This document shows positions 16,088 through 57,876 of a stretch of DNA of 64,000 nt, piece after piece (within the stretch, counting starts at the first letter, position 1; each line of letters opens with the position of its first letter). The DNA comes from Salpingoeca rosetta. Taxonomy: Eukaryota > Protista > Choanoflagellata. Below the pieces are notes generated by a model. The model was given only the letters and a program-made list of their open reading frames with translations. It searched no databases and was not told the DNA's origin. The translations under genes were made by a program, and so were the position numbers. The DNA is taken from NCBI GenBank assembly GCA_033442325.1, contig JAWQFM010000021.1, forward strand, positions 1,083,692 through 1,147,691, written 5' to 3'.

Positions 16088-19000
16088 GGTGGGCGGGTAG
16101 GCGGGTGAACAACAGTGACGGTTCAGAATATGCACACAACCACATGCAGGAGCAAGCAAACAGGCTCAAAGCAAAATGCGCACTCATACTCTCACAAGTC
16201 AACTAAAAAAACACTCGCGTACCATTTGAATCTGCCGAATGCTGATCTGGAAATCCGTGTCGTTAAACTCGTAAGGGATGTTCCAGCCAAGAGCGCCAAA
16301 GCCGCGCCGCTCCTGCACCAGCGCATGGAAGAAGCACAGCCCAAACAACAGCTTGCGGAACGCCTGTATGTATGTGTGCGTGTGTGCGTGTGTTGGTGAC
16401 ATGAGGTGCAATGCGTGGGTATGTAAGTGAAGAGAAGAGAAGAGAAGAAAAGAGAGCTACTGTTCAGTTTCAACAGTTCACAACAGAGCAAAGAAAATGC
16501 GATCAAAACTTTACCTCGACAATACAGCACCCACACACCCACACACCCACACCCGCACACCCACCCACACCCACACCCACACCCCCACCCACACCCACAC
16601 ACACACACACACACACACACCTTCTCCTGCTTGCAGTTGTTGAAAAAGTCCATGTCTGAAATGGGGTGGAGGAGGTACGAGCGGATGATGTTGTTGCGCA
16701 GGCCCTTTGGCGGCTCGTTGGTCATCTTCACGCCGTTCTGCAGCACGGCCACGGGGAAGTGTGGCGACGGGTAACTGGTCAGCCACAGCCGGAAGTTGGG
16801 GTGCGTGGTATCTGGGTTGAGGTCCTCGCACAGCCGCTCGAGCGTGGGCATCCAGCTCACCGCCAAGTGGCAGTTCTGCAGCACAACCCACGTGCCGTCC
16901 TTGATGGCCTTCTCCACCATCTTCATGGCAATGGGGCCCTGGCCCTGCCCGAGCGACAGGGTCTCCATAGTCGACCCGTACCCTTGGTCGTCCGCAAACT
17001 TGAGCAGCGCGCTCATCGGGTCACCGCCAGGCGACAGCACAAAGATGAGCGGAATGCAGCTGTGCGAGTCTGCAAACGCGCCCGCCAGGTCAAACGGCGG
17101 CGGCTCAATGAACTTGCGGCCCATGTGCTCCTCCACAAAGTTCTGCACCGCGGGCACCACCTTGTCCGGCCGCACCGCGCGCAGCACGCACAGCCGCTGG
17201 AAGGAGGTGAAGCGCTCCCCAAACGTGGGTGGCGGGTCGTTGTGCGGCTGCGACGAGTCGTACATCTTCTTCCACTCGGACGTGTTGGTCTCCACATCCT
17301 CGCGCAGGCCCACAAACGCAGGCAGGTCATTCAGGCGGCACAGCTCGTCCCAGGCCTTGGAGGGCAGCCACTCCTCGGCCGGGTTGGCGTGCGGGTTGTC
17401 CAGGCCGACGCCGCCCGTGAGGAAGAACATCCACTCGCCCGCGTCGATGTTGCCCTCCTTGCGCATGATGTTCACGCACAGCAGCATGGCAAACAGCAGC
17501 TTGTCCTTCTCAAACAGCGAGCGGCACACGTTCTTGTACAGCGAGTACGTGAAGTAGTCCCGCAGGTTCTCCAGGCGCTTGGCCAGGTCCTCCGAGGGCT
17601 TGCTCTGCTCAATGGCGTTGAGGAACAGGTTGGTGAACCACGGCAGCGAGTACTGGTACATCGGGTCGATGTTGGCCAGCTGCGCAATGGTGAAGAACAG
17701 CACGGACGAGTGGGCGGCAATGGGCTTGTACCCGGCGCGCGCCGTGTCAATCTTCACCTCCGTCTCCTCGGCAACCTGCTGCTTCTCGCTAATCTCGTTG
17801 GCCAGCACCTTGGACGAGGACAGCACGTTGATGGCGCTCTCGTCCTCCAAGATGTTGCCCTCCGACGACGACAGCACCTCCAGAATCTTGTCCTCAATCT
17901 CCTTCAGCTGGCGCTTGTTCTTGGCAGACTGCACAATGAGCGCGTTCTTCTCCTCCTCCAGCTCGGGCCGCTCCTCCGCCACAACAATGCCCAGCAGCTG
18001 GTCCTCCAGGCCCGCGGGCGTGATCATGAAGTTGAGCAGCGTCACCTTCACCGCCGTCTCGGGCAGGTAGTGCGGGTTGGGCAGCTTGGTCGTGATGTAC
18101 AGCCGGAAGTCCTTGGAGTACTCGATGGTGGTGTCACCGAGGCGGATGCACATGGTGCCGGCCTGCTTGAACGTCTGCTTGAGCAGCACGGGCTCCAGGA
18201 TGGAGTCGAGCTCCTCCCCAACGTTCTCCAGCAGGATGGGCGTGCCAAACTGGATGGCGTTCTCCAGCGAGCGCACAAAGTCCGAGTCCGACAGCTTCAC
18301 CACCGTCAGCTTGTTCTCCTTCTCCATGTTCTTCACCCACTTGTTCGCCTGCCCCTGCGGGTCAATCATGAGCGGCCAGCGCCGCGAGTACTGCACGATG
18401 ATGCCGTTGTCCACGGAGAAGCTGTCCGTGGGCAGGCCGGCAATGTTCCACTCGCGAATCTTCACGGGGTCACCCAGCGTGCGTGCCAGCGAGAACGTCT
18501 CTGAGCACGGGATGTGCAGCGCCTGGCACCGCTGCATCCATTCGTCGCACTGCTCCTGGCGCAGCTGCGACGGGAACGCGCCCAGGTACGCCACCAGGCC
18601 CGAGGACACCAGCACGTCGCCAGTCAGGTTGGTGTACGTCACGCCGAGCGCGTCGGCGGTGGCCATCCAGCGGTCCTTCTCGTCACCCAGGCTGGACATG
18701 AGCTTCTCCGCGCGCTTGAGCTTGGTGGCACACAGCTCCACCTGCGCCTCCAGGCTCTCCTTCTTGTCGTTGAGCTCCTTGAACTTGTCCTTGAGGTCCT
18801 GCAGCTTCTTCTGGATGGCGGCCAGGTTGTCCTGCTTCTCCTTGAGCGTGGCCATGGCCTGCGCCAGCTCGCCCTCGGCCTGCTTGAGCGCCTCCTTCTT
18901 GGGCGCCACCACCTTGGCCACGCGGTCGTACGCCTCCATGGCGCGCACCCACTTGCACAGGCCCTCCGCGGCAACCGAGGCCTTGGCCACCTTCTCCGGC

Positions 19001-22000
19001 ACAAAGTTCTCGTCCGGGATGAAGCGGTCGCGAATCTCCTTCATCACCTTGGGCGAGATGTTGTCCTTGTCGTAGTCCTTGAGCGACTGCAGGAACTTCA
19101 TGTCGCCGAGCAGGCGCAGCGAGGGCCCCCAGTAGTCGGTGATCTTCTTCCCGCTGCCGCTCGGGTCCGGCACGCGGTCGGGCTTCTCCCCCTTGAGGAT
19201 GCACACGGCCTCCATGACCAGCCGCACAATGTCTGGCGGGCGCTTCATGGCCTTCACCTCGCCAATGTCGCTGGGCTTGAGCGTGTCCAGCGCAGCGAGG
19301 GCGCCGTTGAGGATGGGGATGGCCTCAGCCAGGTCGGCGTCGCACTCGTCCTTGATGGCCTTGGCCGCCTGCGCCTGCTCGTTGGCCACGGCCTCGTCCG
19401 CGGCCACAATCTTCTGCTGCTCAGCCACGTCCTTGGACGACGCCTCAATTTCCACCATGGCCGCGTCCGTCTCCTTCTGCGCCGCCTGCAGCTGCGGCTG
19501 CAGCGCCACCAGCTCCTCCTTCATGCCGTCGACCTGCGACGCCGCGGAGCGCAGCTTCTCCAGGCCCACCTCGTACCGCCGCTTCTGCTTGGACACGGCC
19601 TGCCGCCGGTTGTCCAGCATCACCTTGTACGTGTTGATGAGCTCGAGGTACGACGTGGGCGTGACGTAGTTGTGGCGGCGCAGCTGCGCCAGCATGCGCT
19701 CGGACAGCGCGCGCGTGCTCTCGTGGAACTCCTGGCACAGCTGCACGCAGTGGTGCCGCAGGTCCTCGCCCATCTCCACGTCCTCCAGGAAGCGCTGCGC
19801 CACAATCTGCAGGGCGTCCGCGGGCCAGGCCTGGAACCAGTTGATGGTGCAGCAGTTGACCAGCGAGGGGAACTGCCGCAGGTTGTTGCGGAAGGCGTCG
19901 CCAATGGGGCTCATGGCCAGCACAATGTGCAGGTAGTCGCGCACGCGCGAGATGAACAGGTTGTAGAGGGCCAGCGGCGTGCCGTCCGTCTTCATGTGCT
20001 TCGGGCGCGACTTGTCCACGGTGCGCATCTTCTCGATAATCTCCGTTTTCTCGTCCAGCGGGAAGATGTTGGGCACCTCGCCCGAGTTGAGCAGGTTGGA
20101 GATGTCCTCCAGGAAGGCCGCCTCCTTGATCTGCATGTCCGTGAAGAGGAACACCGTGTGCTCGCCCTTCTCGCCGGCCGTGCGCATGATGCGCTTGACG
20201 TCCTCGCGCCAGTCCTCCATGTTGTAGCTCTTGCTGATCTCAATCTGGATCACCTCAAAGTCGTTGATGTACGCGGCGAGGCGCGTGAGGGACTGCCGCC
20301 CGCTGCCGCCCACGCCGACCAGCAGGCCGTGCGACCGCGGCTGCCGCACGATGCGCGCGATGCGGGTGATGTGCTCAATGGCGAAGCGGAAGAGGACGAG
20401 GTCCATGCGCTTCTTGCTGATGTTGTTGTACTCGTCCAGGAAGCCCTCGCAGACGCCGCGCAGCGTCTCCACGTCCTGCACCATCATGTAGTCCTTGGCC
20501 TCCGCCTTGGGGTTCTCAAAGTCGCAGAACATGAGGGAGCGCAGGTCGTCGTCGGTGACCTCGCCGTCGCCGTCAAAGTCGAGGTGCGACATGAGCGTGT
20601 TGAAGGGCGTGCCCAGGTGCTCCTCGCACGTCTGCTTCACGTACCCAAACAGCCAGGCGCGGTCCTCGTCAAAGACCAGGCGGTCGTAGAAGACGCGGTA
20701 CACCTCGTGCACCCACAGCCGCTGCATGTCCGTCACCTCCGGCAGCGACGCCGGGCCGGACATCATCACGCCCGCAATCACGCGCCCAAAGTCGCGCAGG
20801 TTGAAGAGGTAGTGGGACTTGGCCGGCGTGGGCAGGAGGCTCTTGATGGCCGCCTTGTACACCTCGGCCGTGGCGCGCACGATCTTGTGCGCCACGTCGG
20901 AGAAGCCCGCCTCAAACCCGCGCGCGTCAATGTGCCACTCCATGATGCGGCGGAAGATCTGCTGGTTGGTCTCGTCGTCAAACTCGTTGATGGTGATGCA
21001 GTGGAGGTGGCGCATGAACCGCTGCGTGACCGTGTTGCGGCCGCCGCCCGGCGGGCCCATGGCGCAGATGAGCTGGATGTCGACCAGGCCAATGTTGGAG
21101 CAGTCCTGCAGGTCGTACCAGTTCCAGTGGTCCAGCCACTGCCGCAGCAGCTCAATCGGCGGCTGCGCGCCGTACTCCTCCTTGGCCGGCATGTTGAGGT
21201 CGTCCACAAACACGACCACGCGCTGGCCCATGGGCGGGCCAAACACGCCCTTGCGCCGCTTGTCGAGCTTGCCCAGCACAATCTCCTGCGTCTGCTGCGC
21301 GGACGTCTGCGCGGAGAAGTTGACCACCAAGGGCTTGAACGTGTCCTTGGGCAGCTGGTGCTGCAGGAAGCCGTTGATGTACACGGACTTGCCCGTGCCC
21401 GTGGGGCCGACGAAGACGGCCAGCTTCTGGTGGCGCACGAGCAGGTCCATGAGGTACTGGTAGCGCGCCGTGTCGATGGTGGGTACGGTGATGGTGTTGA
21501 ACGACGCGTCCTTGGGGAAGGGCGAGGTGTCCACGCGCGAGCTCCAGTGCACCCACTCGCCGGTGGTGCCCTCCTTGTGGAAGAAGTAGTTGTACACGAG
21601 CCCTTCCTCCGGGATGGTGGCGGCGAGCGGCTCGTCGGGCGGGCCGCACTTGGTGAGGATGTTGTACTCCGCCATAATTTGGGCGTCCAGGCCCGTGGTC
21701 ATGAGGCGGCGCATGAGCACGTCAAACTTCTGCCGCCCGTCCGTGTTGGTGCTGCCGCCGAGCGACCACATAAACGCAAAGAAGAAGATGCCGTCGAGCC
21801 AGTTGCACACCTGCGCCTCGGACAGCTGCTCAAAGGCCTTGGGGTCCCGGAACTCGTCCATGAGCGCGTCGCACATGTGCATGCACGAGCGCACGAGGTT
21901 GATGTCGCCGGCGTAGGAGAGGTGGCGGTAGCCCGCGTGCGCCACAAACTCGAGCGTGGGCGGGACGACACGGTGGAAGTGCTTGGACAGGCGCTCGTGG

Positions 22001-23385
22001 TGGCTCTCGCTGAGCGTGTCCGGCAGGGTGGCCAGCCAGGACGTGAGCAGGGGCTCCCAGCCAAGGTTCTGCGGCTCCATGTAGATCATGCCGCAGCGGG
22101 ACACGGTGGCGGGGGAGGCGACCTCCAGGTCCATGGGCTCGAAGATGAGGTTGGTGGTGTCGGCGAGCTGGATAATCTCGCCAGACATGAGGCAGAGCTT
22201 CTTGTTGTCGTCGAGGACGGTGTTCATGTTCTCGATCCAGATGGCGTCGACGGGCCCGTCGAAGATGAGCCACTTGCGGTCGGGCGTGGTGGACGTGGCA
22301 AAGTGGCGGTAGCTCACGGCGAGCACGCCGTCAGACCACTCGTGCGACACGGGGTCGAAGCTGCCGTAGAGCTGGCCCATGGTGATGGCCTTTGGGTTGA
22401 TGACGGTGATCTCCACGGCGTTCTCCTCCATGAGTTTCTGCTCGTGCAGGTCGTGCAGGGCGCCGGCCAGCACGCGGTACGCCTCCGTCTTTCCGCCAAA
22501 CCCTTCGCCCACGATCATAAAGCCGTGGCGCACAATCATCATCTCGTAGATCTGCAGAATCTTCTCGATAAAGGCCGGGTGCGGCTGCAGGTTGCGCTTG
22601 GCGCAGTTCTCGTGGATGGCCTTGAGCATGACCTCGTAGTCCGGCTCCGGCAGCTTGATGCCCGGGAAGAGGTCGGAGATGATGCCGCGGAAGAGCGGGA
22701 GATCGTGCGACAGGAACTTGGGCAGGTTGACGTCCGTGATGGAGCGCAGCATGAGAATGTCCTCGCTCTGCTCCGGGTACTTGAGCTTGAGGTTGCCTGC
22801 GGCGGTGAGCACAGACTTGACGGCGCGCATGCCGTAATCGTAGTGGTACTGCGACGACAGCTGCTCCGAGCACAGGCGGTACGTGGCCACAATCTTCACG
22901 GAGAGCGAGCGTGCGTTGCGGAAGCCAACAGAGTACAGCACAATCTCAGCAATGAGGGCGTAGTCTGGCACCATCATGGCCACGGTGCGGAAGAGCGCCT
23001 TGAGGTTGTCTGGCAGCTCGGAGCGTCCGGCGTAACCGGGATTCATGGTGATGAACACGGAGCTCGTGGGGATGAGCCGGATCTCCGTGCCCTCAAACAC
23101 AATCTTGTCCATGCCCGCGTTGATGCCACGCTGGATTGTGAGGATCTGCTGTGCAACGACGGAGAGCACCTCCAGGTCGATGCGGTTGAACTCGTCGAAG
23201 CACGACCAGGCGCCAGAGGACGCAAGGCCCTTGAAGAACTTGCCCAGTGCCTTGTAGTCAAGACCATCCGAGCCTATGGGGGGGGGGGGGGTGGAAGGAG
23301 AAGGGAAGAGATGGAAGGAGGAGGAAGGAGGCAGGAGGAGGTAAGTCAGCATGATGGCTCAGGCCCTTTGTTGTTGTGCTGGTTT

Positions 23386-23454
<69 letters not shown>

Positions 23455-23754
23455 AGGTGTGTGTATGCAAAGAAAGCAACTTACACTACAAGCGTGGGCG
23501 GATGTCGTCAGAGGTGGCGGGATACGTCACACGGGGCCAACGCGGGAAGGAGTAAGCGAAACATGGCAGGTGTGGCAGCAGACGGGCAAGCAAGTGCGAC
23601 CGGTGAGCGAACGCCAGCTGATATACATGCAAAGTGGTGGCAGGACCAACCCAGGAAACACGCACAATTGAAATGCAAGGCACAAGGGCTTACGCTGTTG
23701 TTGTTTAAGTTGTTGTTGTTGTTTAAGTTGTTGTTGTTGTTGTTGTTGTTTAAG

Positions 23755-23795
<41 letters not shown>

Positions 23796-26700
23796 GAAGG
23801 AAGACAAAGCCATGGAGAAGATTATGGTGAGTAGGAGCGTAATAAGTTGATTTCAGGAGCAGGAGGATGGAGGGTGAGAGTTCGCAACAGCATCAGCGAC
23901 ACCAAGCACAAGCACAAGCACAAGCACAAGCACAAGCACAAGCACAAGCACAAGCACAAACAACAACAACAACAACAACAACTTAAACAACAATAACAAC
24001 TTAAACAGCAACTTAAACAACAACAACAACTTAAACAACAACAACAAAAGGAGCCCCTACCCCACGAATCAAGGATGAAACAACGAGTGACTCACTTGAA
24101 GACGACGCACTGGACGGCGACGGCTTTTGCGAGATCCTTGACAGTCTCGGTCTTGCCGGTACCGGCGGGGCCTTCGGGCGCACCACCGAGATGGAGCTCC
24201 AGCGCACCAAAGAGGGTGCGGTAGCAGCGATCTGTGAGCGGCGTGACGACGAGGCGGCCGGTGTTGCCCAGGTACTCGTAGCCGTAGTTGAGGGTGGAGT
24301 TGATCATGCGGGTGACCACTTGCTCCTCCTCAAAGTAGTAGCGCAGCTGGCACAGCCAGGCAAACTCGTCGTCGCGCTGGATGCCGTCCTTGATCAGGCC
24401 CGTGAGCACGTCGCGCGAGTGCACGTCAAGCACGATGAGGGCGCTGAGCGTGGTGCGGATGTTCTTGCTGAGCTTGCCGCGCACCAGCTCCACGACGTCG
24501 TTGATGTCCTCGTTGCAGCTGTTGAGGTACTTTGTGAGGGCGTCAGGCCCGCCGCGGATGGCCTCGTGCACGCTTGTGGTCCAGTACTTTTGCGTAACGG
24601 CGAGGACGACCTGGCCCGGCCAGGACTGGATCCAGTCCGTGCGCTTGGTGTTGGGGTAGGAGGCAATGCCCTCGACCATAATCTTGCGAATGGACGAGCG
24701 CATGATGGACTCGAGCTGCAGCAGCCACTTCTCGACCTGGCCGCGCGCCTCCGCCGTGGAGATGACCGTGTCCAGCTCCACCTCCTCGTTCTCGCTCGAG
24801 CGCATGTGGGTGATGTCCAGGTCCTCTGTGAAGGTGAGCTTGGCAATGCCCTCGAAGCACTTCTTCAGGTGCGGCTGCACGCGCGTCGGGTCCTTGGTCT
24901 CGGACAAGATCTCCAGCATCTCGTCGTTGGAGAGGAAGAAGAAGCGGGAGAAGTAGAGGCGCTTCTGTTCGAGGTAGCGGTTGAGGCCCTTGAGGATCAG
25001 CTCCAGCAGGTCGTTGGCCTTGGTCAGCTTCTCAAGCATCTTGTCCAGCTCAATCACCACCAGAACGTGCTTGTCCTTGATGGCCTGCTTCATGAGGTCG
25101 CGCCAGGTGCCGTCCACGACCTTGAAGCGGCGGCCTTCCTCCGGCATCTGCGCCATAATGTCTGGGGAGCTGAAGATGGGCTCGAGGTAGAGCCACGTAG
25201 CCTGGACCTTGAGCCAGGCGTCGAGGATGTCCTGCAGCTTGATGAGCGTGGCGTTCCACTCGCGCATCTCCTCCTCAAACGGCTTGACAAAAGGCGAGCC
25301 GAGCATGGTCTGCGTCTTGACAATCTGGTCGTCAAGCAGCAGCTGGATCTCGTCCACGGAGGAGAGGATGGTGGTGCCGGTGTCGCGGTACTCGACCATG
25401 CCAAACTCCATGTCGCTCCACTCCTCCTTCATCTTGCGCAGCGCCTTCTCCAGGGAGAACTCCTTGGTGGCCGCCTCGGAGATGCCCTCAAACTGCTCCA
25501 GGTGCGGCTCCAGGTTCATCTCCAGCAGCTTGGACAGCGTCGTGTCCTCGTCCGGCATGAGGTCAAAGCCGACAATCTCGCTGATCTGGTCCCAGTGGCG
25601 GTCGCGCAGGCCCGGGTTACACAGGGCCTGGATGAGCGGCATGTGGTCCTTGAACTCGTCGACGGACGTCTTGACGTTGGCGGCGATGCTGCGCGGCGCC
25701 TCCTTCTCGGAGAAGGTCTTCTCCAGCTTGTACAGGTTGCGCCAGGTCGTGCCCACGGTGTTCTCCACCTCCTCCGGGTCAATGGCAGAGAAGTCACCCT
25801 CCATCCACTGCTCCAGCTGCTCGTTGAAGCCCACAACCGCCTGGTACAGGGTGAGGAACGGCGCGAGCTTGCTGGCGGCCTTGTGGCGCAGCGGGTACTG
25901 CGTGTTCTCCCAGTCAAAGGCCTCCTCCTCCTTGTTGATGGCCTCGATGCGGTCCACGGCGTCCTCGAGCTGGGCGTTGAGCGCCTCCGCCTGCTCCTTG
26001 TACTGCGCAACGGCGTCCAGGTCGCCCAGGGACTCAAACGCATCCAGCTGCTCAAAGTACTCGTCGAGGTCTGCGTTGAGCTGCTCCCTGCGCTGCAGCA
26101 GGGCCGCCTCTGCCTTCTCACGCGATGAGCGGATCAGCGCCTTGTGGTCGTCGATGATCGGCTGCATGCGCGTCGTCCACTGCAGCGTCCGTCCCATCAG
26201 CACAATCTCCTCCCTGCAGGTGTGGTAGTGTGAGATTGTTGGTTTTGGGGCCGGGGGGAAGGGGCGACGGTAAGAGAGGGGGATGCACATATAAGTCAAC
26301 AAGCAAACCGATCAGCAATGGCAAAACGAAGAGATAGAGACAGCCACAGGCACTGAGACGGACTGAGACGGACTGAGACGGACTGAGACAGCAACACAGA
26401 GATTGAGAGAGTTCGAGAGAGACAAGGAGCCGGTGCTGAGCCAACAGTTGATGAATCAACCGACTAAAGGCGGGGACATACATGTCGATGGACGCGTGAT
26501 CGATGAGGTAGTCCATCTTCTTTCTGGAGTCTGCCACGGCGAGCTCAAGCTTTGGCAGGCGCTCCATCTCAACCTTCTCCATAAACTCGCGCAGCTGCAT
26601 GAGCTCATCGGTGTTCTCGGGCACCTTGGCCGCCTTCTCTGCAATCTCAGAAAACTGCTCGCACAGCTCTTGGTTCGCGACCTGGTGGAGTGAACAAGGG

Positions 26701-45041: not shown

Positions 45042-48000
45042 TCAGAGGTCCTGACGCGGAGTCGAAGGACGTGGCGACCGGCCCGAATGAGGACGGGCCC
45101 GTGGCTGGCAGCCTGGCAGAGGACGCTGGTCGAACAGCATCGTGCAGAACTGAGCCGTCTTGGGCCGAGGGAGGATCTTCGTGAGGAGATCTGCGATCAT
45201 GTGCTCCGTGGCGAGGTAGCTCAGCACAATCCTCTTGGTGTCGACGCACTCGCGGATGTAGTGGTATTTGACGAGGATGTGCCGCATGCGCGAGGCGGCG
45301 TGTTCGGCAACGCGCTGCGCCGGCTGGTTGTCCGTGTGGACGAGCGTGGGCTCGCACAGGACGGCGCCGGTGAGCTCCTCCTGGAGTTGGCGAAGGAACA
45401 TGAGTTCCTGTGCGGTGGCTGCGAGAGCCATGTACTCCGCGTCGGCGGAGGCTGTGGCCACGGTGGCCTGCAGCTTGGAGTTCCAGGACACGGGGCCCGT
45501 GGAACANNNNNNNNNNNNNNNNNNNNNNNNNNNNNNNNNNNNNNNNNNNNNNNNNNNNNNNNNNNNNNNNNNNNNNNNNNNNNNNNNNNNNNNNNNNNNN
45601 NNNNNNNNNNNNNNNNNNNNNNNNNNNNNNNNNNNNNNNNNNNNNNNNNNNNNNNNNNNNNNNNNNNNNNNNNNNNNNNNNNNNNNNNNNNNNNNNNNNN
45701 NNNNNNNNNNNNNNNNNNNNNNNNNNNNNNNNNNNNNNNNNNNNNNNNNNNNNNNNNNNNNNNNNNNNNNNNNNNNNNNNNNNNNNNNNNNNNNNNNNNN
45801 NNNNNNNNNNNNNNNNNNNNNNNNNNNNNNNNNNNNNNNNNNNNNNNNNNNNNNNNNNNNNNNCGTGTCAATGTCGGAGGCGAACGACGCATCCGAGTAC
45901 GCTGAGAGCACGCCGTCGGCAGTGCTTCCGTTGCTGGCGTCGCCAGTGGCGGCGTACTTGATGGTGTAGGACAAGGTGCCCTTGATGTAGCGAAGAAGGT
46001 GCTTGGCAGCCTTCCAGTGGTCCATGCCGAAGTGCTGCATACGGCGAGACAGGATGGAGACAGCCGCCGAGATGTCTGGGCGCGTCATCGTCGCAGCATA
46101 GAGGAGGGAGCCAAGCAGCTCGCGGAACGGCACATCCGGGAGTGGCTCCTCCTTGTCGGCTGGCTTGTCGACGTAGCCCGTGCAGAGCGGCGTGCCGACA
46201 GGCTTGCAGTCAGCCATGCCGAAGGTCTCCAGCACGTTGCGCAGGTAGTGCACCTGGCTCATGGTGACGGTATTGGCCTTGCGGTCGTGCTGCACCTTGA
46301 TGCCGAGACATATGTCTGGGCTGCCCAGGTCCTTCATCTTGAAGCGCTTGGAGATGGCCTTCTTGAACGCGGCCATGTCGCTGTCGCCGTCGGCGAAGAT
46401 GAGCAGGTCGTCCACGTAGACGGCAACCCACATCACTTTGCCACCCTTGCAGGTGCGGCGGTAGATGCAGGCGTCCGTGGCTGTGGCGACGAAGTCCTGC
46501 TCGCGCATCCAGGCGTCCAGCGTGTGGTTCCACAGGCGCGGGCTCTGCTTCAGCCCATACAGCCCGCGCTTGAGGCGCAGGACCGTATTCGGCGAGAAGA
46601 TGCCGTCGACGGCCGGTGGCTGGACGTAGATCTCGTGATCTACGGGCGCGTTGAGGAAGGCCGTGTTGACGTCCATCTGCTGGATGTCCATGCCACGCGC
46701 GACGGCCATGGCGAGCATGGTGCGGATGGCTGCGATGGTAGCCGTCGGAGCAAAGGTGTCCGTGTAGTTAACACCGTGGACCTGGGAGTAGCCCTTGGCA
46801 ACCCAGCGCGCCTTGTACTTGATTACCTTGCCCTGGTCATCGCGCTTCTTCCGAAAGATGACCATGCTGCGGAGCACCTTCTGGCCCTTGGGAAGGTCAG
46901 CGCGAGGCACGACGTCGTAGACGTCATTGGCCTGCATTGCCGCAAACTCGTCCAGGATGGCTTGGCGCCACTCCTCAGAGTCTGGCGAGGCAAGCGCCTC
47001 CTTGACGGTGGCTGGCTCAGCTGACGTGACAGCACTGCCAGCAGCGATGTCTGGTAGATGACCACCCACTGCTGATGTCTTCTCCCCCGTACCAGCAGCG
47101 CTGGTGGCAACGTGACACGTGGTGGTTGAGTCACCAGAGGTGTCCTTGTCGCCGAGGGTCTCGGACACCAGCAGCTGGTCCCAGACGGAGCCGCCAAGGG
47201 CGCGTGGCTGGAGCTGCGGCTCCCCCGCACGTGGTGCAGTGGGAGCGCCGGTGGCACTGTCCTCGGTCGAACGCTGAGCGGTCTTATTGGCATGCGAAGC
47301 AGAGGCACCGCTGTTGTCCTGCTCTTGCTGCTGCTGAGAGGAGGCGACGTCCTTGTTCTTGATGGCGCCGAAGCGAGCGTGGATGGTGTGGACAACGCGT
47401 CGCGTGTCCGGCATCCAGACGACGTGGGCCTGGTCCTCCTCGGCGAAGCCGACGTAGACGCCGACGCGTGAGCGTGGGTCAAGCTTGTGCCGCGTGCTGC
47501 TCTTCTCCACATGCACGTAGGCCGGCGAGCCGAAGACGCGCAGCAGGCTGACGTCGAAGGCGTGCCCAGTCAGGGCCTCGAACGGTGACTTGTCCTTGAG
47601 GCTCCTGCGTGGCGCGATGTTGTGCAGCAGCGTGGCGTGTTGCACGGCGAAGTCCCAGAACGGCTTGTCCAGGTCCGCAGCAAACAGCATTGTGCGTGCC
47701 GTCTCGAAGAGGGTGCGGAAGGTGCGCTCTGCGGATCCGTTCTTGGCCTGCGAGTGCGGTGGCGAGAAGCGCTGCTTGATGTCGAAGGCCAGGCACAGGT
47801 CGGTGAAGTCCTGGCTCTTGAAGACGGCGTCGCTATCCGTCTGCAGCGTGGCGTTGACGATGTGACGGTCCTTGCGCAGTTGCTCCAGGGCCGCACCGAC
47901 CTCGTTCTTGTGCCGGATGAGAAACGTCCAGGCGAAGCGCGTGCAGTCGTCGATGAAGGTCAGCGCGTAGCGTGCACCTCGCAGCGACGTCTCCTCCAGC

Positions 48001-48048: not shown

Positions 48049-49009
48049 NNNNNNNNNNNNNNNNNNNNNNNNNNNNNNNNNNNNNNNNNNNNNNNNNNNN
48101 NNNNNNNNNNNNNNNNNNNNNNNNNNNNNNNNNNNNNNNNNNNNNNNNNNNNNNNNNNNNNNNNNNNNNNNNNNNNNNNNNNNNNNNNNNNNNNNNNNNN
48201 NNNNNNNNNNNNNNNNNNNNNNNNNNNNNNNNNNNNNNNNNNNNNNNNNNNNNNNNNNNNNNNNNNNNNNNNNNNNNNNNNNNNNNNNNNNNNNNNNNNN
48301 NNNNNNNNNNNNNNNNNNNNNNNNNNNNNNNNNNNNNNNNNNNNNNNNNNNNNNNNNNNNNNNNNNNNNNNNNNNNNNNNNNNNNNNNNNNNNNNNNNNN
48401 NNNNNNNNNNNNNNNNNNNNNNNNNNNNNNNNNNNNNNNNNNNNNNNNNNNNNNNNNNNNNNNNNNNNNNNNNNNNNNNNNNNNNNNNNNNNNNNNNNNN
48501 NNNNNNNNNNNNNNNNNNNNNNNNNNNNNNNNNNNNNNNNNNNNNNNNNNNNNNNNNNNNNNNNNNNNNNNNNNNNNNNNNNNNNNNNNNNNNNNNNNNN
48601 NNNNNNNNNNNNNNNNNNNNNNNNNNNNNNNNNNNNNNNNNNNNNNNNNNNNNNNNNNNNNNNNNNNNNNNNNNNNNNNNNNNNNNNNNNNNNNNNNNNN
48701 NNNNNNNNNNNNNNNNNNNNNNNNNNNNNNNNNNNNNNNNNNNNNNNNNNNNNNNNNNNNNNNNNNNNNNNNNNNNNNNNNNNNNNNNNNNNNNNNNNNN
48801 NNNNNNNNNNNNNNNNNNNNNNNNNNNNNNNNNNNNNNNNNNNNNNNNNNNNNNNNNNNNNNNNNNNNNNNNNNNNNNNNNNNNNNNNNNNNNNNNNNNN
48901 NNNNNNNNNNNNNNNNNNNNNNNNNNNNNNNNNNNNNNNNNNNNNNNNNNNNNNNNNNNNNNNNNNNNNNNNNNNNNNNNNNNNNNNNNNNNNNNNNNNN
49001 NNNNNNNNN

Positions 49010-52000
49010 TCTACAGATTATGAGACCCAGCCACTCCTGATCATCATCGCCACTTGTCTCACACTCGCTTGTGCTTCTTCTCTCCCTTCTGCTTGTTCCC
49101 CTCTCTTGTTTCTCCATCACCCTTCTTGAGCGTGCAGTATGTCTGACCCGTCGGACCACGTCGTTTCCACGCCAGGATTCAAGATGGACCTGCCCAAGTT
49201 CTCTGGCTCGCCCGGCACCTTTCATGCGTGGAGCATTCGCATGAAGATGGCGCTCAATCTGCGCGGCGACGACGTCTGGGCAGCTGTGGAGGCAGGAGCA
49301 TCGTCATCGGGAGGTCCAAGCTCAGCGACACGCTCAAGTGCAAGGAGACCGACAGCAGGAGATCACGCCAACCTCACCGCTGCAAACCTCATCGCGTCCA
49401 CGCTCTCAGGCTACCCCCTTCTCCTGTTCACCAACGGAGAAGCAGACGTCAACGCCGGCCAAGGATGGGCCCGGCTCAAGGACCACTACGCTTCGCAGGA
49501 CCGCCTCCGCATTGCAGAGCTCAAGGAGGCGCAGCTTCACGTCCCCTGCGGCAACCTCGCCCGCTTCTTCGAGCGACACATGGAGCTGCAGCAGCAGTTG
49601 CAGGACGCGGGCGTGCGTCAGGACAACGAGGACCTCTTCACCATCGTCTGGAAGCAGCTGCCACGCTGGACAGCCCCGCTCACGCTTCCCTACTTTGCCA
49701 GTGGCCGCTTTCCCTCCCTCCTCGAGCTCAGCATCAGGCTGCAGCAGCTGGAGCAGCAGATGCGTGGTTCACGCACANNNNNNNNNNNNNNNNNNNNNNN
49801 NNNNNNNNNNNNNNNNNNNNNNNNNNNNNNNNNNNNNNNNNNNNNNNNNNNNNNNNNNNNNNNNNNNNNNNNNNNNNNNNNNNNNNNNNNNNNNNNNNNN
49901 NNNNNNNNNNNNNNNNNNNNNNNNNNNNNNNNNNNNNNNNNNNNNNNNNNNNNNNNNNNNNNNNNNNNNNNNNNNNNNNNNNNNNNNNNNNNNNNNNNNN
50001 NNNNNNNNNNNNNNNNNNNNNNNNNNNNNNNNNNNNNNNNNNNNNNNNNNNCCTTCGTCGCTGCCACAGCTACTACACCCACGCAGCTGCATGACCCACT
50101 CACGTGGCTTGCAGACACGGGTGCTTCACACCACCTCACCTTCGTCAAGGACGCCTTCGTGGAGCTGACACCGCACCTGCAACAGCACCATCCACGCCAC
50201 ATCACTGCGTTTGGCGGCACACGTGTGCCCGTGCGCGGTGTTGGCTCTGTGCTGTTGCATGCACGCACGACGAGCGGAGCCAGGATGCAGGTTGTGCTAC
50301 AGGAGTGCCTCTACGTGCCCGAGGGCCAGGCCAACCTCATCGCCCTCGGTCGTCTGACCAGGGACAGCAGCGGCAGGCCAACGGGCCACTCGCAGCGTGA
50401 TGGCGCTGATGGGCACTACGTGCGCTTCAGCCACGGAGCCGAGGTCAAGCTGAAGGAGCGCAACAGCCTCCGGTGCTGGCCCATTGTTGCTGTTGGTCCA
50501 TCCACGGCACACGGTCTCACCGCCGATGCCTGCAAGCAACCACAGCAACCCGCAGCAGCTCCTGCAGCCCAGAGCAAGGTGCAGACACCATCGATGCATG
50601 AGGTACTTGGCCACCGCAACGACAACGACGTGCAGCAGTACTGCAAGCTGATGGGCATCGACGATCGCAACGTCATCAGCAGCAAGCAGTGTACAACGTG
50701 CGCAGTGACCAAGAGCACTCGTCACAGCGTCAGCAAGCACGCGGAACGCACACAGGTGCCCGGCGAGCGCATCCACGCCGACATCGTCGACTGGACCGCG
50801 GACTCGCCCACGGGCAAGCGCTACAGCCTCGTCATCGTCGATGAGGGAAGCAAGCTCCTGCATGCAGTCCATCTCAACGCCAAGAAGGACGCAGTTGCCG
50901 CGTTCCAGTCTTTCCTGCGCGAGACCAAGCTCCCCATCTCACCCACAACAACAGCACTCCAGACGGATTCCGATGCCATCTTCCTCGGAGCTGACTTCCA
51001 GGCCATCGTCAAGAAGCACCTGAAGCAGCACCAGCAGTCCCCGCCGTACACCCAGGCGCAGAACGGCATCGTCGAGCGACAGGTGCGCACCCTCTCCGAC
51101 ATGGTGCGAGCCATGATCACGGGTGCAGGCCTCGACGCATCGTACTGGAGCCTCGCCTGTAACCACGCCCTCCACATCCTCAACAACATGCCTCGCCCTT
51201 CCCTCCACGGCAAGACACCGCTGCAGATTGTCACGGGCTCGCTGCCCAAGCACGTGCCGCAGCTGCACGTCTTCGCGCAGCCGGCCGTCGTCCACATCAG
51301 CACACAGCGCGGACGCCTGCAGCCCAAGGGCCGCCGAGGCATCTACGTCGGCCACAACAGCAGCAGCAACAGCCACCTCGTCTACTTTGAAGACACGAAC
51401 ACCGTTGTGTCCTCCATCCACGTCCGCTTCCTTCCCTTCTCCAAGGCCGATGATGTCGTGGATGAGGGGGAGGAGCAAGTGCAGACATCCACGACATCGT
51501 CCATGCTCCAGCTTCCCAGTGCACGTGACAGCAGCAACAGCACCACTGACGGTGAGCCACCAACGGTTCACATCGATGAGGACCAGGACGACGATGTCGA
51601 GACAGACTCCCTGCTCACGGACTTCGACAACGACAGCAGCAGCGACACCAACGACGCCAACTACGACCCCGACACAACAGATGCAAGCGACACCGAGGCA
51701 GGCGCGTTCACAGCAAGCAGCAGTGACGACACCAGCCTCACGGAGCCTGCAAGCATCAAGCAGGCACTCAAGAGCCAGCAACGCAAGCAGTGGACTCAGG
51801 CATGCTTGGAGGAGATCGGGGCCATGGAGCGCAACGGCGTCATCAAGCTCATCCCACGCAGCGCCGTGCCACGACAGCACACGCCTCTCAAGTCACGCTT
51901 CGTCTTCAAGGTGAAGCGTGACGCTGAGGGCGCGCCGACGCGCTTCAAGGCACGCTGGGTCGCCAAGGGCTTCAGCCAACGACCGGGCATCGACTTCGAC

Positions 52001-53457
52001 CAGACCTACGCCCCAACACCAGCAGCCAAGACCATCCTCACTGTACTCGCCGTCTCCCTGCAACGACAGCACCAGCTGCACCAGCTCGACTTCAAGTCGG
52101 CTTACCTGCAGGCTGATCTCAAGGAGGAGCTGTACATGGAGCTGCCGCCGCACTTCACCGACATCGGCGACGGCGCTCAACGCTACGCGGGCAAGGTGTG
52201 CCGGCTGCTCAAGCCGCTCTACGGCCTCAAGCAAGCTGGCCGTGCATGGGCCAAGAAGCTGCACACCTTCCTCAAGACCAACGGATGGGCGCAGAGCAAC
52301 GTCGACGCCTGCCTCTTCACCAAGCTCCACGACGACGGACAGCGCACATGGATCATCACGTACGTCGACGACCTCATCATCAGCGGCAGCAGCGAGCGCC
52401 ACATCCGTGCCTGCAAGCAGCAGATCAAGGAGAGCTTCGAGGCAGAGGACCTGGGCCCGCTCACCTGGTACCTGGGCCTTCACCTGACGTCACCAGCTGA
52501 CGGGGTGTTGCATATTGCGCAGACACAGGCCATCAACGACATCGTCAACGACTACAACCTGGCAGCGGCAGCCAGCGTGTCCACGCCCATGCGTGTTGGC
52601 ATCGACGCCTCCAGCATCAGCGAGCAGCCCGACCAACGCCTGCCTTTCCGCAACCTCGTCGGCTCGCTCCTGTACCTGGCCAACCGCACGAGACCAGACG
52701 TCAGCTTCGCGTGCGGACTGCTCTGCCGTTACATGGACCGTTACACGACGGTCCACTGGCAGGCAGCCAAGCACGTCGTGCGGTACCTGAAGGCGACGAG
52801 CGAGCACGGCCTCCTCTTCAAGCGACGCAGCGGCACGCGCAAGGACCAGCCGCTGGACCTTGTGTGCTACAGCGATGCCAGCTTCGGCACCGACCAGCTG
52901 ACGGGCCGCTCCACGACGGGCTTCACCTGCTACATCAACGGCNNNNNNNNNNNNNNNNNNNNNNNNNNNNNNNNNNNNNNNNNNNNNNNNNNNNNNNNNN
53001 NNNNNNNNNNNNNNNNNNNNNNNNNNNNNNNNNNNNNNNNNNNNNNNNNNNNNNNNNNNNNNNNNNNNCCTACACACGTGAGTTGTGTGCCATGTGTGTG
53101 TGTGTGTGTGCATGCCCGTCATGCTTGGCAAATGCCATGTGTGCGTGCCATGCAGTGTTGTGAAGTGTTGTCTGTTGTGTATGCTTGCCTGCAAGCATTC
53201 ATGCCATGCTTAGCATTGCTCTGCGCGCATGTATGCATGCTGCTCATTGTTTAGATTGTTTATGTTCGTGCACACTCTGCTCATGTCGCCTTGGCAGCTC
53301 TGTTGACTGTGTGTGCACTTGTCGAGTGTTTGTTTGAGCGTGCTGCCCGAGTTGATTTGGCAGCCGCTTGTTGTGCTTGTTCATTCTCCTTGTGTTCTTG
53401 TTTGTTGCGTTTGCCTACAGTAAACACACACACACACACACCTGTCGTGTCTCAACA
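49010..53457 (+). mobile_element. Ty1/copia element B: PBS-like site ~49016-49030, gag-pol 49139 to at least 52942, probable 3' LTR 53069-53457
   Basis: gag LPKFSG..FHAW; protease WLADTGASHH; HEVLGH..CTTC; integrase QNGIVER; RT FKARWVAKGFSQ, YVDD. GATTATGAGACCCAG resembles the copia GGTTATGGGCCCAG PBS. The LTR-like segment ends CTCAACA exactly where a minus-strand gag ORF is cut. Confidence 0.88.
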
Positions 53458-57776: not shown

Positions 57777-57876
57777 NNNNNNNNNNNNNNNNNNNNNNNN
57801 NNNNNNNNNNNNNNNNNNNNNNNNNNNNNNNNNNNNNNNNNNNNNNNNNNNNNNNNNNNNNNNNNNNNNNNNNNNN

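What the first reader, a model, noticed from the sequence alone, without database searches (positions are those of the whole stretch)
23273..24096. Two consecutive single-nucleotide exons rebuild the dynein FNCSDG motif
Seen: the upstream exon ends ...GTC TTC AA|GTGAGT (24096, phase 2) and the 6.6-kb motor exon starts catAG|GC TCG GAT GGT (23273, phase 1). Direct joining shifts the frame and lacks 2 nt. Inside the 822-bp interval, in the correct order on the minus strand, are caacAG|C|GTAAGC (23694) and ttgtAG|T|GTAAGT (23485). Including both gives TTC AA-C T-GC TCG GAT GGT = F-N-C-S-D-G. Established: VVFNCSDGLD is highly conserved in AAA1 of axonemal dyneins just after the P-loop. Inference: three introns (401, 208, 211 bp) are separated by 1-nt exons, which exon definition cannot recognise, so ordered or recursive-like splicing is implied. 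Skipping either base would truncate the motor and could act as an NMD-coupled switch. Single 1-nt exons are rare, and I do not know of a tandem pair.
Basis: partly seen in the sequence, partly recalled or inferred. Interest (0 to 1): 0.93.

Follow-up and report, generated by a model that had tools for sequence, protein, structure and literature searches.

The report
Two back-to-back one-base exons in dynein
In a ciliary dynein motor gene of a protist (probably a choanoflagellate), two exons of a single base each, with ordinary introns on either side, supply the two letters needed to spell a conserved ATPase motif. RNA data confirm it, and three sister genes in the same genome are built the same way, which is the first tandem case I could find.

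Summary
Confirmed. On the minus strand the upstream exon ends ...TTCAA at 24096, and the 6.65-kb motor exon starts GCTCGG at 23273.

- **RNA evidence:** Contigs from two RNA-like runs of two different studies join these two points with exactly two extra letters, CT. The mRNA therefore reads TTC AAC TGC TCG = F-N-C-S.
- **DNA evidence:** DNA runs show no such joint and reproduce both exon edges and both candidate sites without change. The joined 21-mer is absent from the genome.
- **Source of the CT:** The 822-nt interval has only two AG-N-GT sites, C at 23694 and T at 23485, in the right order. It has no AG-CT-GY site. That gives three introns of 401, 208 and 211 nt, normal sizes for this gene.
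- **Paralogues:** The same AA|intron|C|intron|T|intron|GC layout occurs in the DNAH3-, DNAH12- and DNAH5-type genes of this genome, in introns that otherwise cannot be aligned. The DNAH2-type gene has only the T exon, and the DNAH10-type gene has only the last intron.
- **Other species:** Related species and sampled animals have no intron or a single intron here.
- **Literature:** Papers describe only isolated 1-nt exons (plants, Fusarium).

Stepwise splicing is inferred, not shown. The proposed NMD (nonsense-mediated decay) switch has no evidence. I rate this a new variant of a known kind, of high interest.

The parts
24096..26213 (-). Upstream coding exon (linker to the AAA1 P-loop, GPAGTGKTE...QCVVF). 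It ends with AA, the first two bases of the Asn codon. The 5' boundary is approximate.
   Evidence: An RNA contig ends this side of the joint at 24096.
23695..24095 (-). Intron 1, 401 nt, GTGAGT...CAACAG. A CTTAAAC branch-point-like motif lies about 13 nt before the AG.
   Evidence: RNA runs X17 and X19 have no depth at this intron's unique sequence; the depth binned at 23904-24091 comes from short TTG/CAA-repeat contigs.
23694..23694 (-). One-nucleotide exon C, the third base of the Asn codon AAC.
   Evidence: One of only two AG-N-GT sites in the interval. The CT is present in RNA contigs. The same AG|C|GTRNG site is found in three paralogues. A DNA contig covers 23468-23695 and stops one base short of it, so the DNA check covers only its acceptor AG.
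23486..23693 (-). Intron 2, 208 nt, GTAAGC...TTGTAG, with CTGAC about 27 nt before the AG. It is unique in the genome.
23485..23485 (-). One-nucleotide exon T, the first base of the Cys codon TGC.
   Evidence: The same AG|T|GTRAG site is found in four paralogues.
23274..23484 (-). Intron 3, 211 nt, GTAAGT...CCCATAG. It contains a (CA)n tract, then CTGAC, then a long AG-free pyrimidine tract.
16621..23273 (-). The 6.65-kb motor exon. It starts GC TCG GAT GGT (the last two bases of Cys, then S-D-G-L-D-Y-K).
   Evidence: The RNA joint is at 23273.
23959..24050 (-). 5' arm of a roughly 92-nt inverted microsatellite repeat, (TTG)n TTTAAG, inside intron 1.
   Evidence: pair I1, 85% complementary. 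Folds give z of about -11 to -13.
23689..23780 (-). 3' arm, CTTAAA(CAA)n. It runs through the intron-1 acceptor, the C exon and the first bases of the intron-2 donor.
   Evidence: Not seen in the paralogues.

Best explanation
The gene is a DNAH7-type inner-arm axonemal dynein heavy chain. Between the exon ending ...TTCAA (24096) and the motor exon starting GCTCGG (23273) lie three ordinary U2-type GT-AG introns of 401, 208 and 211 nt. They are separated by two exons of one nucleotide each, C (23694) and T (23485). Splicing all three introns yields TTC AAC TGC TCG, restoring the frame and the AAA1 motif F-N-C-S-D-G. That the CT is in the mature mRNA is shown. That it comes from these two sites is strongly inferred.

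How it most likely works (inferred): introns here are short, so they are recognised by intron definition. Each has its own branch-point-like motif and pyrimidine tract. The AG of one intron lies inside the -3..+6 footprint of the next 5' splice site, so neighbouring introns cannot be engaged at the same time and are removed one after another. Each step leaves a single base in front of a fresh 5' splice site, much as at a recursive-splicing ratchet point. The donors that follow the 1-nt exons lack the usual exonic G at -1. They compensate with near-consensus intronic GTAAG(T/C). Inclusion of both bases is obligatory for a functional motor.
For: - **RNA:** In one search, one contig in each of X17 and X19 (studies P8 and P9) skips 822 nt between 23273 and 24096 with AG (+ strand) = CT between the sides. 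Flanks match perfectly. These runs have no depth at the unique parts of the interval (23340-23903). Their share of sampled words (0.79-0.80) equals the exonic fraction of the query.
- **DNA:** Runs X2 and X5 have no such joint. Their contigs run from exon into intron at both edges, and contigs spanning 23468-23695 cover the T site and the AG acceptor just upstream of the C exon (23694 itself lies one base beyond them), with 0 differences. The joined 21-mer is absent from the 55.4-Mb genome at up to 1 mismatch.
- **Uniqueness:** These are the only AG-N-GT sites in the interval, and there is no AG-CT-GY site.
- **Paralogues:** The same layout occurs in the DNAH3-type (C7), DNAH12-type (C20) and DNAH5-type (C23) genes. 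The DNAH2-type gene (C3) has the T exon alone. Their introns are not alignable apart from microsatellites.
- **Protein:** Transcript-derived relatives all read VVFNCSDGLDYK. tblastn of P0004 leaves exactly the N and C residues unaligned between the two exons.
- **Intron and donor features:** Other introns of this gene are about 210-460 nt. Donors after 1-nt exons are GTAAG in 7 of 9 cases, against 0 of 4 readable ordinary donors in this gene.
Against: - The RNA evidence comes from assembled contigs, not raw reads. It shows only the end product and cannot show minor isoforms.
- The runs' RNA status is the tool's guess, though their coverage pattern fits RNA.
- No mutational or lariat evidence ties the C and T to 23694 and 23485 specifically.
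- No RNA was examined for the paralogues.
- Close relatives lack the arrangement. L037, 90.5% identical in protein, has FNCSDG contiguous. The arrangement is therefore not needed for dynein expression as such.
Confidence: 0.9

Rival explanations
1. The CT comes from one 2-nt exon, or from non-canonical splice sites elsewhere in the interval, rather than from two 1-nt exons.
For: The RNA contigs show only that CT is inserted, not where it comes from. CT dinucleotides are common in the interval. One paralogue (C20) has an AG|CT|GT site with a poor donor, GTCGAG.
Against: The window interval has no AG-CT-GY site, and the C7 and C23 intervals have none either. The AG|C|GTRNG and AG|T|GTRAG sites are the only elements shared by four otherwise unalignable intervals.
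Confidence: 0.03
2. The genome assembly has lost a genomic CT at an exon edge, or the joined form exists as a processed DNA copy, so a single 822-nt intron suffices.
For: A homopolymer C run sits just before the acceptor, and microsatellites in the interval are not covered by short-read contigs.
Against: Independent DNA runs reproduce both exon-intron edges (22967-23291 and 24021-24245) without differences and show no joint. The joined 21-mer is absent from the genome. Four other genes would need errors at the same place.
Confidence: 0.02
3. The two bases are added after transcription, by insertional RNA editing or polymerase slippage.
For: None beyond the fact that the mRNA carries two letters not adjacent to either exon in the DNA.
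Against: The inserted letters are exactly those sitting between perfect AG and GTAAG signals, in order, in four genes. No other insertions or deletions were reported in the 2.8 kb laid (table 4).
Confidence: 0.01
4. Functional rival, not an anatomical one: the tandem 1-nt exons are used as a regulated on/off switch. Skipping either base sends the transcript to nonsense-mediated decay. On this reading they are not a constitutive, selectively neutral relic.
For: Skipping C or T gives a stop 77 codons after the junction (97 in the construct, which begins 20 codons upstream), and skipping both gives one after 5 codons (25 in the construct), upstream of several exon junctions. Four ciliary motor genes share the feature, which could allow co-regulation.
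Against: Only the fully joined form is seen in two RNA studies. Relatives and animals do without these introns. Contigs cannot show minor isoforms, so this is untested rather than refuted.
Confidence: 0.1

Closest known systems
Single-nucleotide exon of Arabidopsis APC11 (Guo & Liu 2015, PMC4674806), and the conserved 1-nt microexons of plant APC11 and VPS55 (PMC8831610)
   Same: A constitutive exon of one base lies between two GT-AG introns and is needed to keep the frame. Gene annotation misses it. Plant VPS55 also has a conserved strong donor (GTRAGT) after the exon, like the GTAAG donors here.
   Different: The plant cases are single 1-nt exons. Here two sit in tandem, three introns within two coding bases, and the layout recurs in four paralogues of one genome. 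The host is a holozoan protist, not a plant. The nearest plant case reported is adjacent 5-nt and 12-nt microexons.
One-nucleotide exon in Fusarium CYP621A P450 genes (PMC12940212, 2026)
   Same: The site is AG-N-GT. The exon restores a conserved catalytic-domain motif. The case rests on an intronless homologue and SRA reads.
   Different: [quoted passage not shown] It is conserved across orthologues in a genus. Here the feature is shared by paralogues but absent from the orthologues of relatives sampled.
Recursive splicing at Drosophila ratchet points (PMC8605326)
   Same: A 3' splice site lies directly against a 5' splice site inside a long non-coding interval, which implies stepwise removal in which each step regenerates a donor.
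   Different: Ratchet points leave zero nucleotides and subdivide very long introns. Here one coding base is kept at each step, and the introns are short (about 200-400 nt). Stepwise order is inferred here, not shown.
Placozoan mitochondrial cox1 single-base-pair exon (PMC5436844)
   Same: A 1-bp exon confirmed by deep RNA sequencing.
   Different: That exon is in a mitochondrial gene with organellar introns and trans-splicing, not nuclear spliceosomal introns.

Membership tests
Spliceosomal single-nucleotide exon (APC11 / VPS55 / CYP621A kind) | The mature mRNA carries base(s) at an exon-exon joint that are not contiguous with either flanking exon in genomic DNA. | tested here: met
   CT lies between 24096 and 23273 in RNA contigs of two studies; the joined 21-mer is absent from the genome.
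Spliceosomal single-nucleotide exon (APC11 / VPS55 / CYP621A kind) | The base lies in the intervening DNA directly between an acceptor AG and a donor GT, in the right order and with plausible intron signals. | tested here: met
   these are the only two AG-N-GT sites, C then T. The donors are GTAAGC and GTAAGT, and pyrimidine-rich or CTRAC-like motifs lie upstream of each AG.
Spliceosomal single-nucleotide exon (APC11 / VPS55 / CYP621A kind) | The site is conserved in homologous genes while the surrounding intron sequence diverges. | tested here: met
   three paralogues carry both sites and one carries the T site, and their introns are unalignable. The feature is not conserved in orthologues of relatives.
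Spliceosomal single-nucleotide exon (APC11 / VPS55 / CYP621A kind) | Mutating the genomic base changes the mRNA base (reporter or minigene proof, as done for APC11). | not testable with these tools
   This needs a wet-lab experiment.
Recursive (stepwise) splicing | Juxtaposed acceptor and donor (AG|GT) that regenerate a 5' splice site after the first step. | tested here: not met
   One coding base separates the AG and the GT. The site works like a ratchet point but is not a zero-nucleotide one.
Recursive (stepwise) splicing | Detectable partly spliced intermediates, separate lariats, or a sawtooth read profile. | not testable with these tools
   Only assembled contigs were available, and there are no RNA contigs on the unique sequence inside the interval.
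Axonemal dynein heavy chain, DNAH7 type (AAA_6, PF12774) | AAA1 P-loop GPAGTGKTE followed by the FNCSDG motif, with the best match to DNAH7 chains. | tested here: met
   PF12774 match of 385.7 bits; 83-87% identity to animal DNAH7; the best PDB hits are DNAH7 chains (1189 bits, against 1020 for DNAH3).

The most novel reading that the evidence does not exclude
The three introns at AA|C, AAC|T and T|GC may be older than the duplications that produced the DNAH5, DNAH7/3/12, DNAH2 and DNAH10 lineages. Tandem 1-nt exons would then be an ancient state retained in this genome. The single introns seen at neighbouring positions in other eukaryotes would be its remnants: AA|C in L030 and L031, AAC|T in L039, T|GT in the DNAH10 type. 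Piecemeal loss around 1-nt exons would then explain apparent one-base 'intron sliding'. It would also give shared intron positions among ciliary paralogues, a class for which a survey reported none (PMC9120149).
Probability: 0.25. Interest if true: 0.9.

Novelty: new variant of a known kind. Interest (0 to 1): 0.8.

Why it matters
- **Limits of splice-site recognition:** Isolated 1-nt exons have been reported only a handful of times (plants and Fusarium). Here two sit back to back, with three introns inside two coding bases, and the layout is maintained in four essential ciliary motor genes. The spliceosome must then use an acceptor whose AG lies inside the next donor's recognition window, twice in a row and accurately enough to make a 4000-residue motor. 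That gives a natural substrate for studying ordered or recursive-like splicing.
- **Gene annotation:** Any gene model lacking 1-nt exons will break or distort AAA1 in at least five dynein genes of this genome.
- **Intron evolution:** Four adjacent intron positions are used singly in other eukaryotes and together here. This bears on intron sliding, parallel gain and pre-duplication introns.

Tried and rejected
- **Shared RNA structure:** Only intron 1 of the window gene has a strong hairpin (z about -13). The other 11 introns are unremarkable, so I rejected structure as a general mechanism.
- **Recent gene conversion between paralogues:** The introns align no better than shuffles apart from (CA)n and (GT)n tracts.
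- **Introner-like mobile element:** Intron 2 matches only itself in the genome.
- **Animal orthologues:** Trichoplax, Oscarella and Pocillopora DNAH7 and Apostichopus DNAH5 have the motif contiguous. They give no support for conservation in animals.
- **Loci not retrieved:** The Saccoglossus locus was too long to fetch. The P0271 contig had no DNA on file.
- **P0005 contig:** It is one open frame and probably a transcript, so it says nothing about introns.
- **Genome-wide motif count:** I did not count AG-N-GTAAG across the genome. Ordinary donors give the same string, so counts without gene models would mean nothing.
- **Literature:** Searches for tandem 1-nt exons, choanoflagellate microexons and dynein microexons found nothing relevant.
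- **Human sequences:** Human proteins appeared in hit lists. I fetched and compared no human contig.
Full report
**1. Observation.** On the minus strand the upstream exon reads ...CAG TGC GTC GTC TTC AA and is followed by GTGAGT. Its last exon base is 24096. The long open frame resumes after CCCATAG as GC TCG GAT GGT CTT GAC TAC AAG, with its first base at 23273 ([15 protein letters not shown]...). Joining the two directly loses the frame and two bases. Inside the 822-nt interval are CAACAG-C-GTAAGC (C = 23694) and TTGTAG-T-GTAAGT (T = 23485). A scan of the interval found these to be the only AG-N-GT sites. It found no AG-CT-G(T/C) site that could act as a single 2-nt exon.

**2. RNA and DNA evidence.** The look-up of sequencing runs listed 20 runs of one organism that hold the stretch. 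Four of them, guessed to be RNA, hold 0.79-0.80 of the sampled words. That equals the exonic share of the 4001-nt query (3179/4001).

I laid two of these (X17 and X19, from different studies) and two DNA-like runs (X5, X2) on 22400-25200.
- X17 and X19 each have one contig of about 460 nt that matches 22967-23273 and 24096-24246 without a mismatch and skips 822 nt.
- Each contig has two letters between the sides, AG on the + strand, which is CT on the gene strand.
- Both runs have zero depth over 23340-23903. The depth binned at 23904-24091 comes from short TTG/CAA-repeat contigs.
- The DNA runs show no such joint. Their contigs run from exon into intron at both edges (22967-23291 and 24021-24245). 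Contigs spanning 23468-23695 cover the T site and the AG acceptor just upstream of the C exon, with no differences; 23694 itself lies one base beyond them.
- The joined 21-mer is absent from the whole 55.4-Mb genome even with one mismatch.

Assembly error and a processed DNA copy are therefore unlikely. One limit remains: these are Logan contigs, not reads. They prove the product exists but cannot show minor isoforms or intermediates.

**3. What the gene is.** PF12774 (dynein AAA1) matches both exons. The motor exon is 83-87% identical to animal DNAH7 over AAA1, and its best solved-structure matches are DNAH7 chains. tblastn with a full-length transcript-derived relative (P0004, 4021 aa) gives seven coding blocks on the minus strand from about 29149 to 14525. 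It leaves exactly two residues, N and C, unaligned between 24098 and 23271. The other introns of this gene are about 210-460 nt, so 401, 208 and 211 nt are ordinary sizes.

The organism is hidden. The genome size (55.4 Mb in 68 contigs), the GC content and the nearest relatives suggest a choanoflagellate of the Salpingoeca rosetta kind. That is my inference, not a tool result.

**4. The same structure in paralogues.** Searching the genome with PF12774 gave about 13 dynein heavy-chain loci, and several split at model position about 64-66. I read the loci and named them by their best PDB match.

| Paralogue | Layout at the N-C codons | Intron lengths (nt) |
|---|---|---|
| DNAH7 type (window) | AA, intron, C, intron, T, intron, GC | 401 / 208 / 211 |
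| DNAH3 type (C7) | TTCAA, GTAAGT..CAACAG, C, GTAAGT..GAAAG, T, GTAAGT..ACCAG, GCTCGGAT | 261 / 210 / 214 |
| DNAH12 type (C20) | same layout | 185 / 238 / 394 |
| DNAH5 type, outer arm (C23:470k) | same layout, preceded by an 18-nt exon | 231 / 247 / 242 |
| DNAH2 type (C3:816k) | AAC, intron, T, intron, GC (one 1-nt exon) | 296 / 342 |
| DNAH10 type (C27) | only the intron T, intron, GT | not measured |

Three other axonemal loci and the cytoplasmic and IFT (intraflagellar-transport) dyneins have no intron at these positions.

- The paralogous introns align no better than shuffles, apart from microsatellites. The small AG-C-GTRNG and AG-T-GTRAG islands are what is kept.
- In shuffles, an ordered C/T pair of AG-N-GTR sites appears in about 2% of intervals. 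Four out of four is far beyond chance.
- Donors after the nine 1-nt exons are GTAAG seven times, GTACG once and GTGAG once. The four readable ordinary donors of the window gene are GTGAGG, GTGTGT, GTACGC and GTGCGT, each with G at -1.
- Two other first-stage notes on this genome had flagged the C23 and C3 genes. I reached them independently and agree with both.

**5. Other species.**
- Transcript-derived proteins of relatives all read FNCSDG or FNCSDQ.
- Genomic DNA of Trichoplax, Oscarella and Pocillopora DNAH7 and of Apostichopus DNAH5 has the motif contiguous.
- A metagenome contig from a close relative (L037, 90.5% protein identity over 1834 aa, with introns elsewhere) reads [14 protein letters not shown] in one exon. 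It has an intron at K|A instead.
- A DNAH5-type contig from activated sludge (L038) is also contiguous at this motif.
- A further relative (L039) has a single 150-nt intron at AAC|TGC.
- An AT-richer organism (L040) has one intron at TG|T.
- A pattern scan of metagenome contigs found two dynein genes of a GC-rich organism with about 30-nt introns (L030, L031). Each has a single intron at AA|C.

So four adjacent positions are used singly elsewhere, and three of them together here. There are three candidate histories: retention of an old triple with piecemeal loss elsewhere, old gene conversion among paralogues, or parallel gain. I cannot decide between them. A survey of pre-LECA (last eukaryotic common ancestor) paralogues reported no shared introns for cilium duplications (PMC9120149). 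Shared positions among these dynein classes are therefore worth a proper phylogenetic test.

**6. Mechanism.** Shown: the product carries CT, and only canonical signals at 23694 and 23485 can supply it. Inferred:
- There are three independent U2-type introns, each with a plausible branch motif: CTTAAAC about 13 nt, CTGAC about 27 nt, and CTGAC about 78 nt followed by an AG-free pyrimidine tract.
- They are recognised by intron definition.
- The acceptor AG of one intron occupies positions -3 and -2 of the next donor. The two cannot be bound at once, so removal must be stepwise, in the manner of recursive splicing (PMC8605326) but keeping one base per step.
- Strong GTAAG donors offset the missing exonic pairing. 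The same was noted for plant VPS55 (PMC8831610).

In the window gene only, a roughly 92-nt inverted (TTG)n/(CAA)n repeat within intron 1 is predicted to pair across the C exon and the start of the intron-2 donor (z about -11 to -13). It could delay use of that donor until intron 1 is gone. The paralogues lack such a stem, so I treat this as a local curiosity.

Skipping C or T gives a stop 77 codons after the junction, and skipping both gives one after 5 codons (codons 97 and 25 of the construct, which starts 20 codons upstream). NMD of mis-spliced forms is therefore plausible, but I saw no evidence of regulated skipping.

**7. What is known.** Full-text searches found single 1-nt exons in four settings:
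- Arabidopsis APC11 (PMC4674806);
- plant APC11 and VPS55 (PMC8831610);
- a placozoan mitochondrial gene (PMC5436844).

The closest tandem case found is adjacent 5-nt and 12-nt microexons in rice. I found no report of two consecutive 1-nt exons, of 1-nt exons in a holozoan protist, or of any in dynein genes. The library misses most subscription journals, so "not found" is not proof of absence.

**8. Verdict.** It is a new variant of a known kind, of high interest to people who study splicing, intron evolution and genome annotation.

Noticed in passing
L030:7925-9166 (metagenome contig PPCM01001673.1): A dynein heavy-chain AAA1 gene carries an in-frame insertion of about 414 aa between SEQLQQ and CDHYDFGMR. 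It starts with Cys and ends with HN followed by Cys, and contains LAGLIDADG-like blocks. Pfam matches Hom_end_hint (E 1.2e-10). This looks like an intein with a homing endonuclease in a nuclear dynein gene.
   Followed up: partly
L011:760-777 (G000 C23, about 470820-470837): In the DNAH5-type paralogue the exon just upstream of the two 1-nt exons is itself only 18 nt (GCTTTGCGTCGTTTTCAA). That makes three consecutive microexons of 18, 1 and 1 nt.
   Followed up: partly
window 23689-23780 and 23959-24050: A roughly 92-nt inverted microsatellite repeat, (TTG)nTTTAAG / CTTAAA(CAA)n, lies inside intron 1. The predicted hairpin (-163 kcal/mol, z -11) covers the C exon and the intron-2 donor. The paralogues have no counterpart.
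   Followed up: partly
L039:2535-2690; L040:2664-2731; L030:7409-7441; L031:8752-8781: Dynein genes of other organisms each have one intron at a different base of the same two codons: AAC|TGC, TG|T and AA|C (twice). Together with T|GY in this genome, four adjacent intron positions lie within four bases.
   Followed up: partly
L037:1-50 and L004 (G000 C3, about 731 kb): The close relative's DNAH7-type gene has an intron at KDLAK|AVAV. This is the same position as in an outer-arm-like paralogue of this genome (KDMAK|ALGN), and the window gene has no intron there.
   Followed up: no
window 24288-24779: One X17 contig skips 490 nt inside the upstream exon, with non-canonical ends TG..TC and only 22 nt on the shorter side. 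It is probably an assembly artefact between similar dynein sequences.
   Followed up: no
window 24247: C>T is seen in all four runs, DNA included. The RNA-like runs show it on a short 65-nt contig with 3 differences (X17 record 6, X19 record 11). It most likely comes from a paralogue's near-identical P-loop region, not from editing.
   Followed up: no
window 45507-45863, 48049-49009, 49778-50051, 52943-53068, 57777-57876: Five runs of N total 1818 bases (gaps or withheld stretches). They explain the apparent GC dip at 48-50 kb.
   Followed up: no
L031:9105-10100: The second PPCM01 dynein gene has a long non-dynein stretch after KALFRPVT. It may be a large intron or another inserted element.
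   Followed up: no
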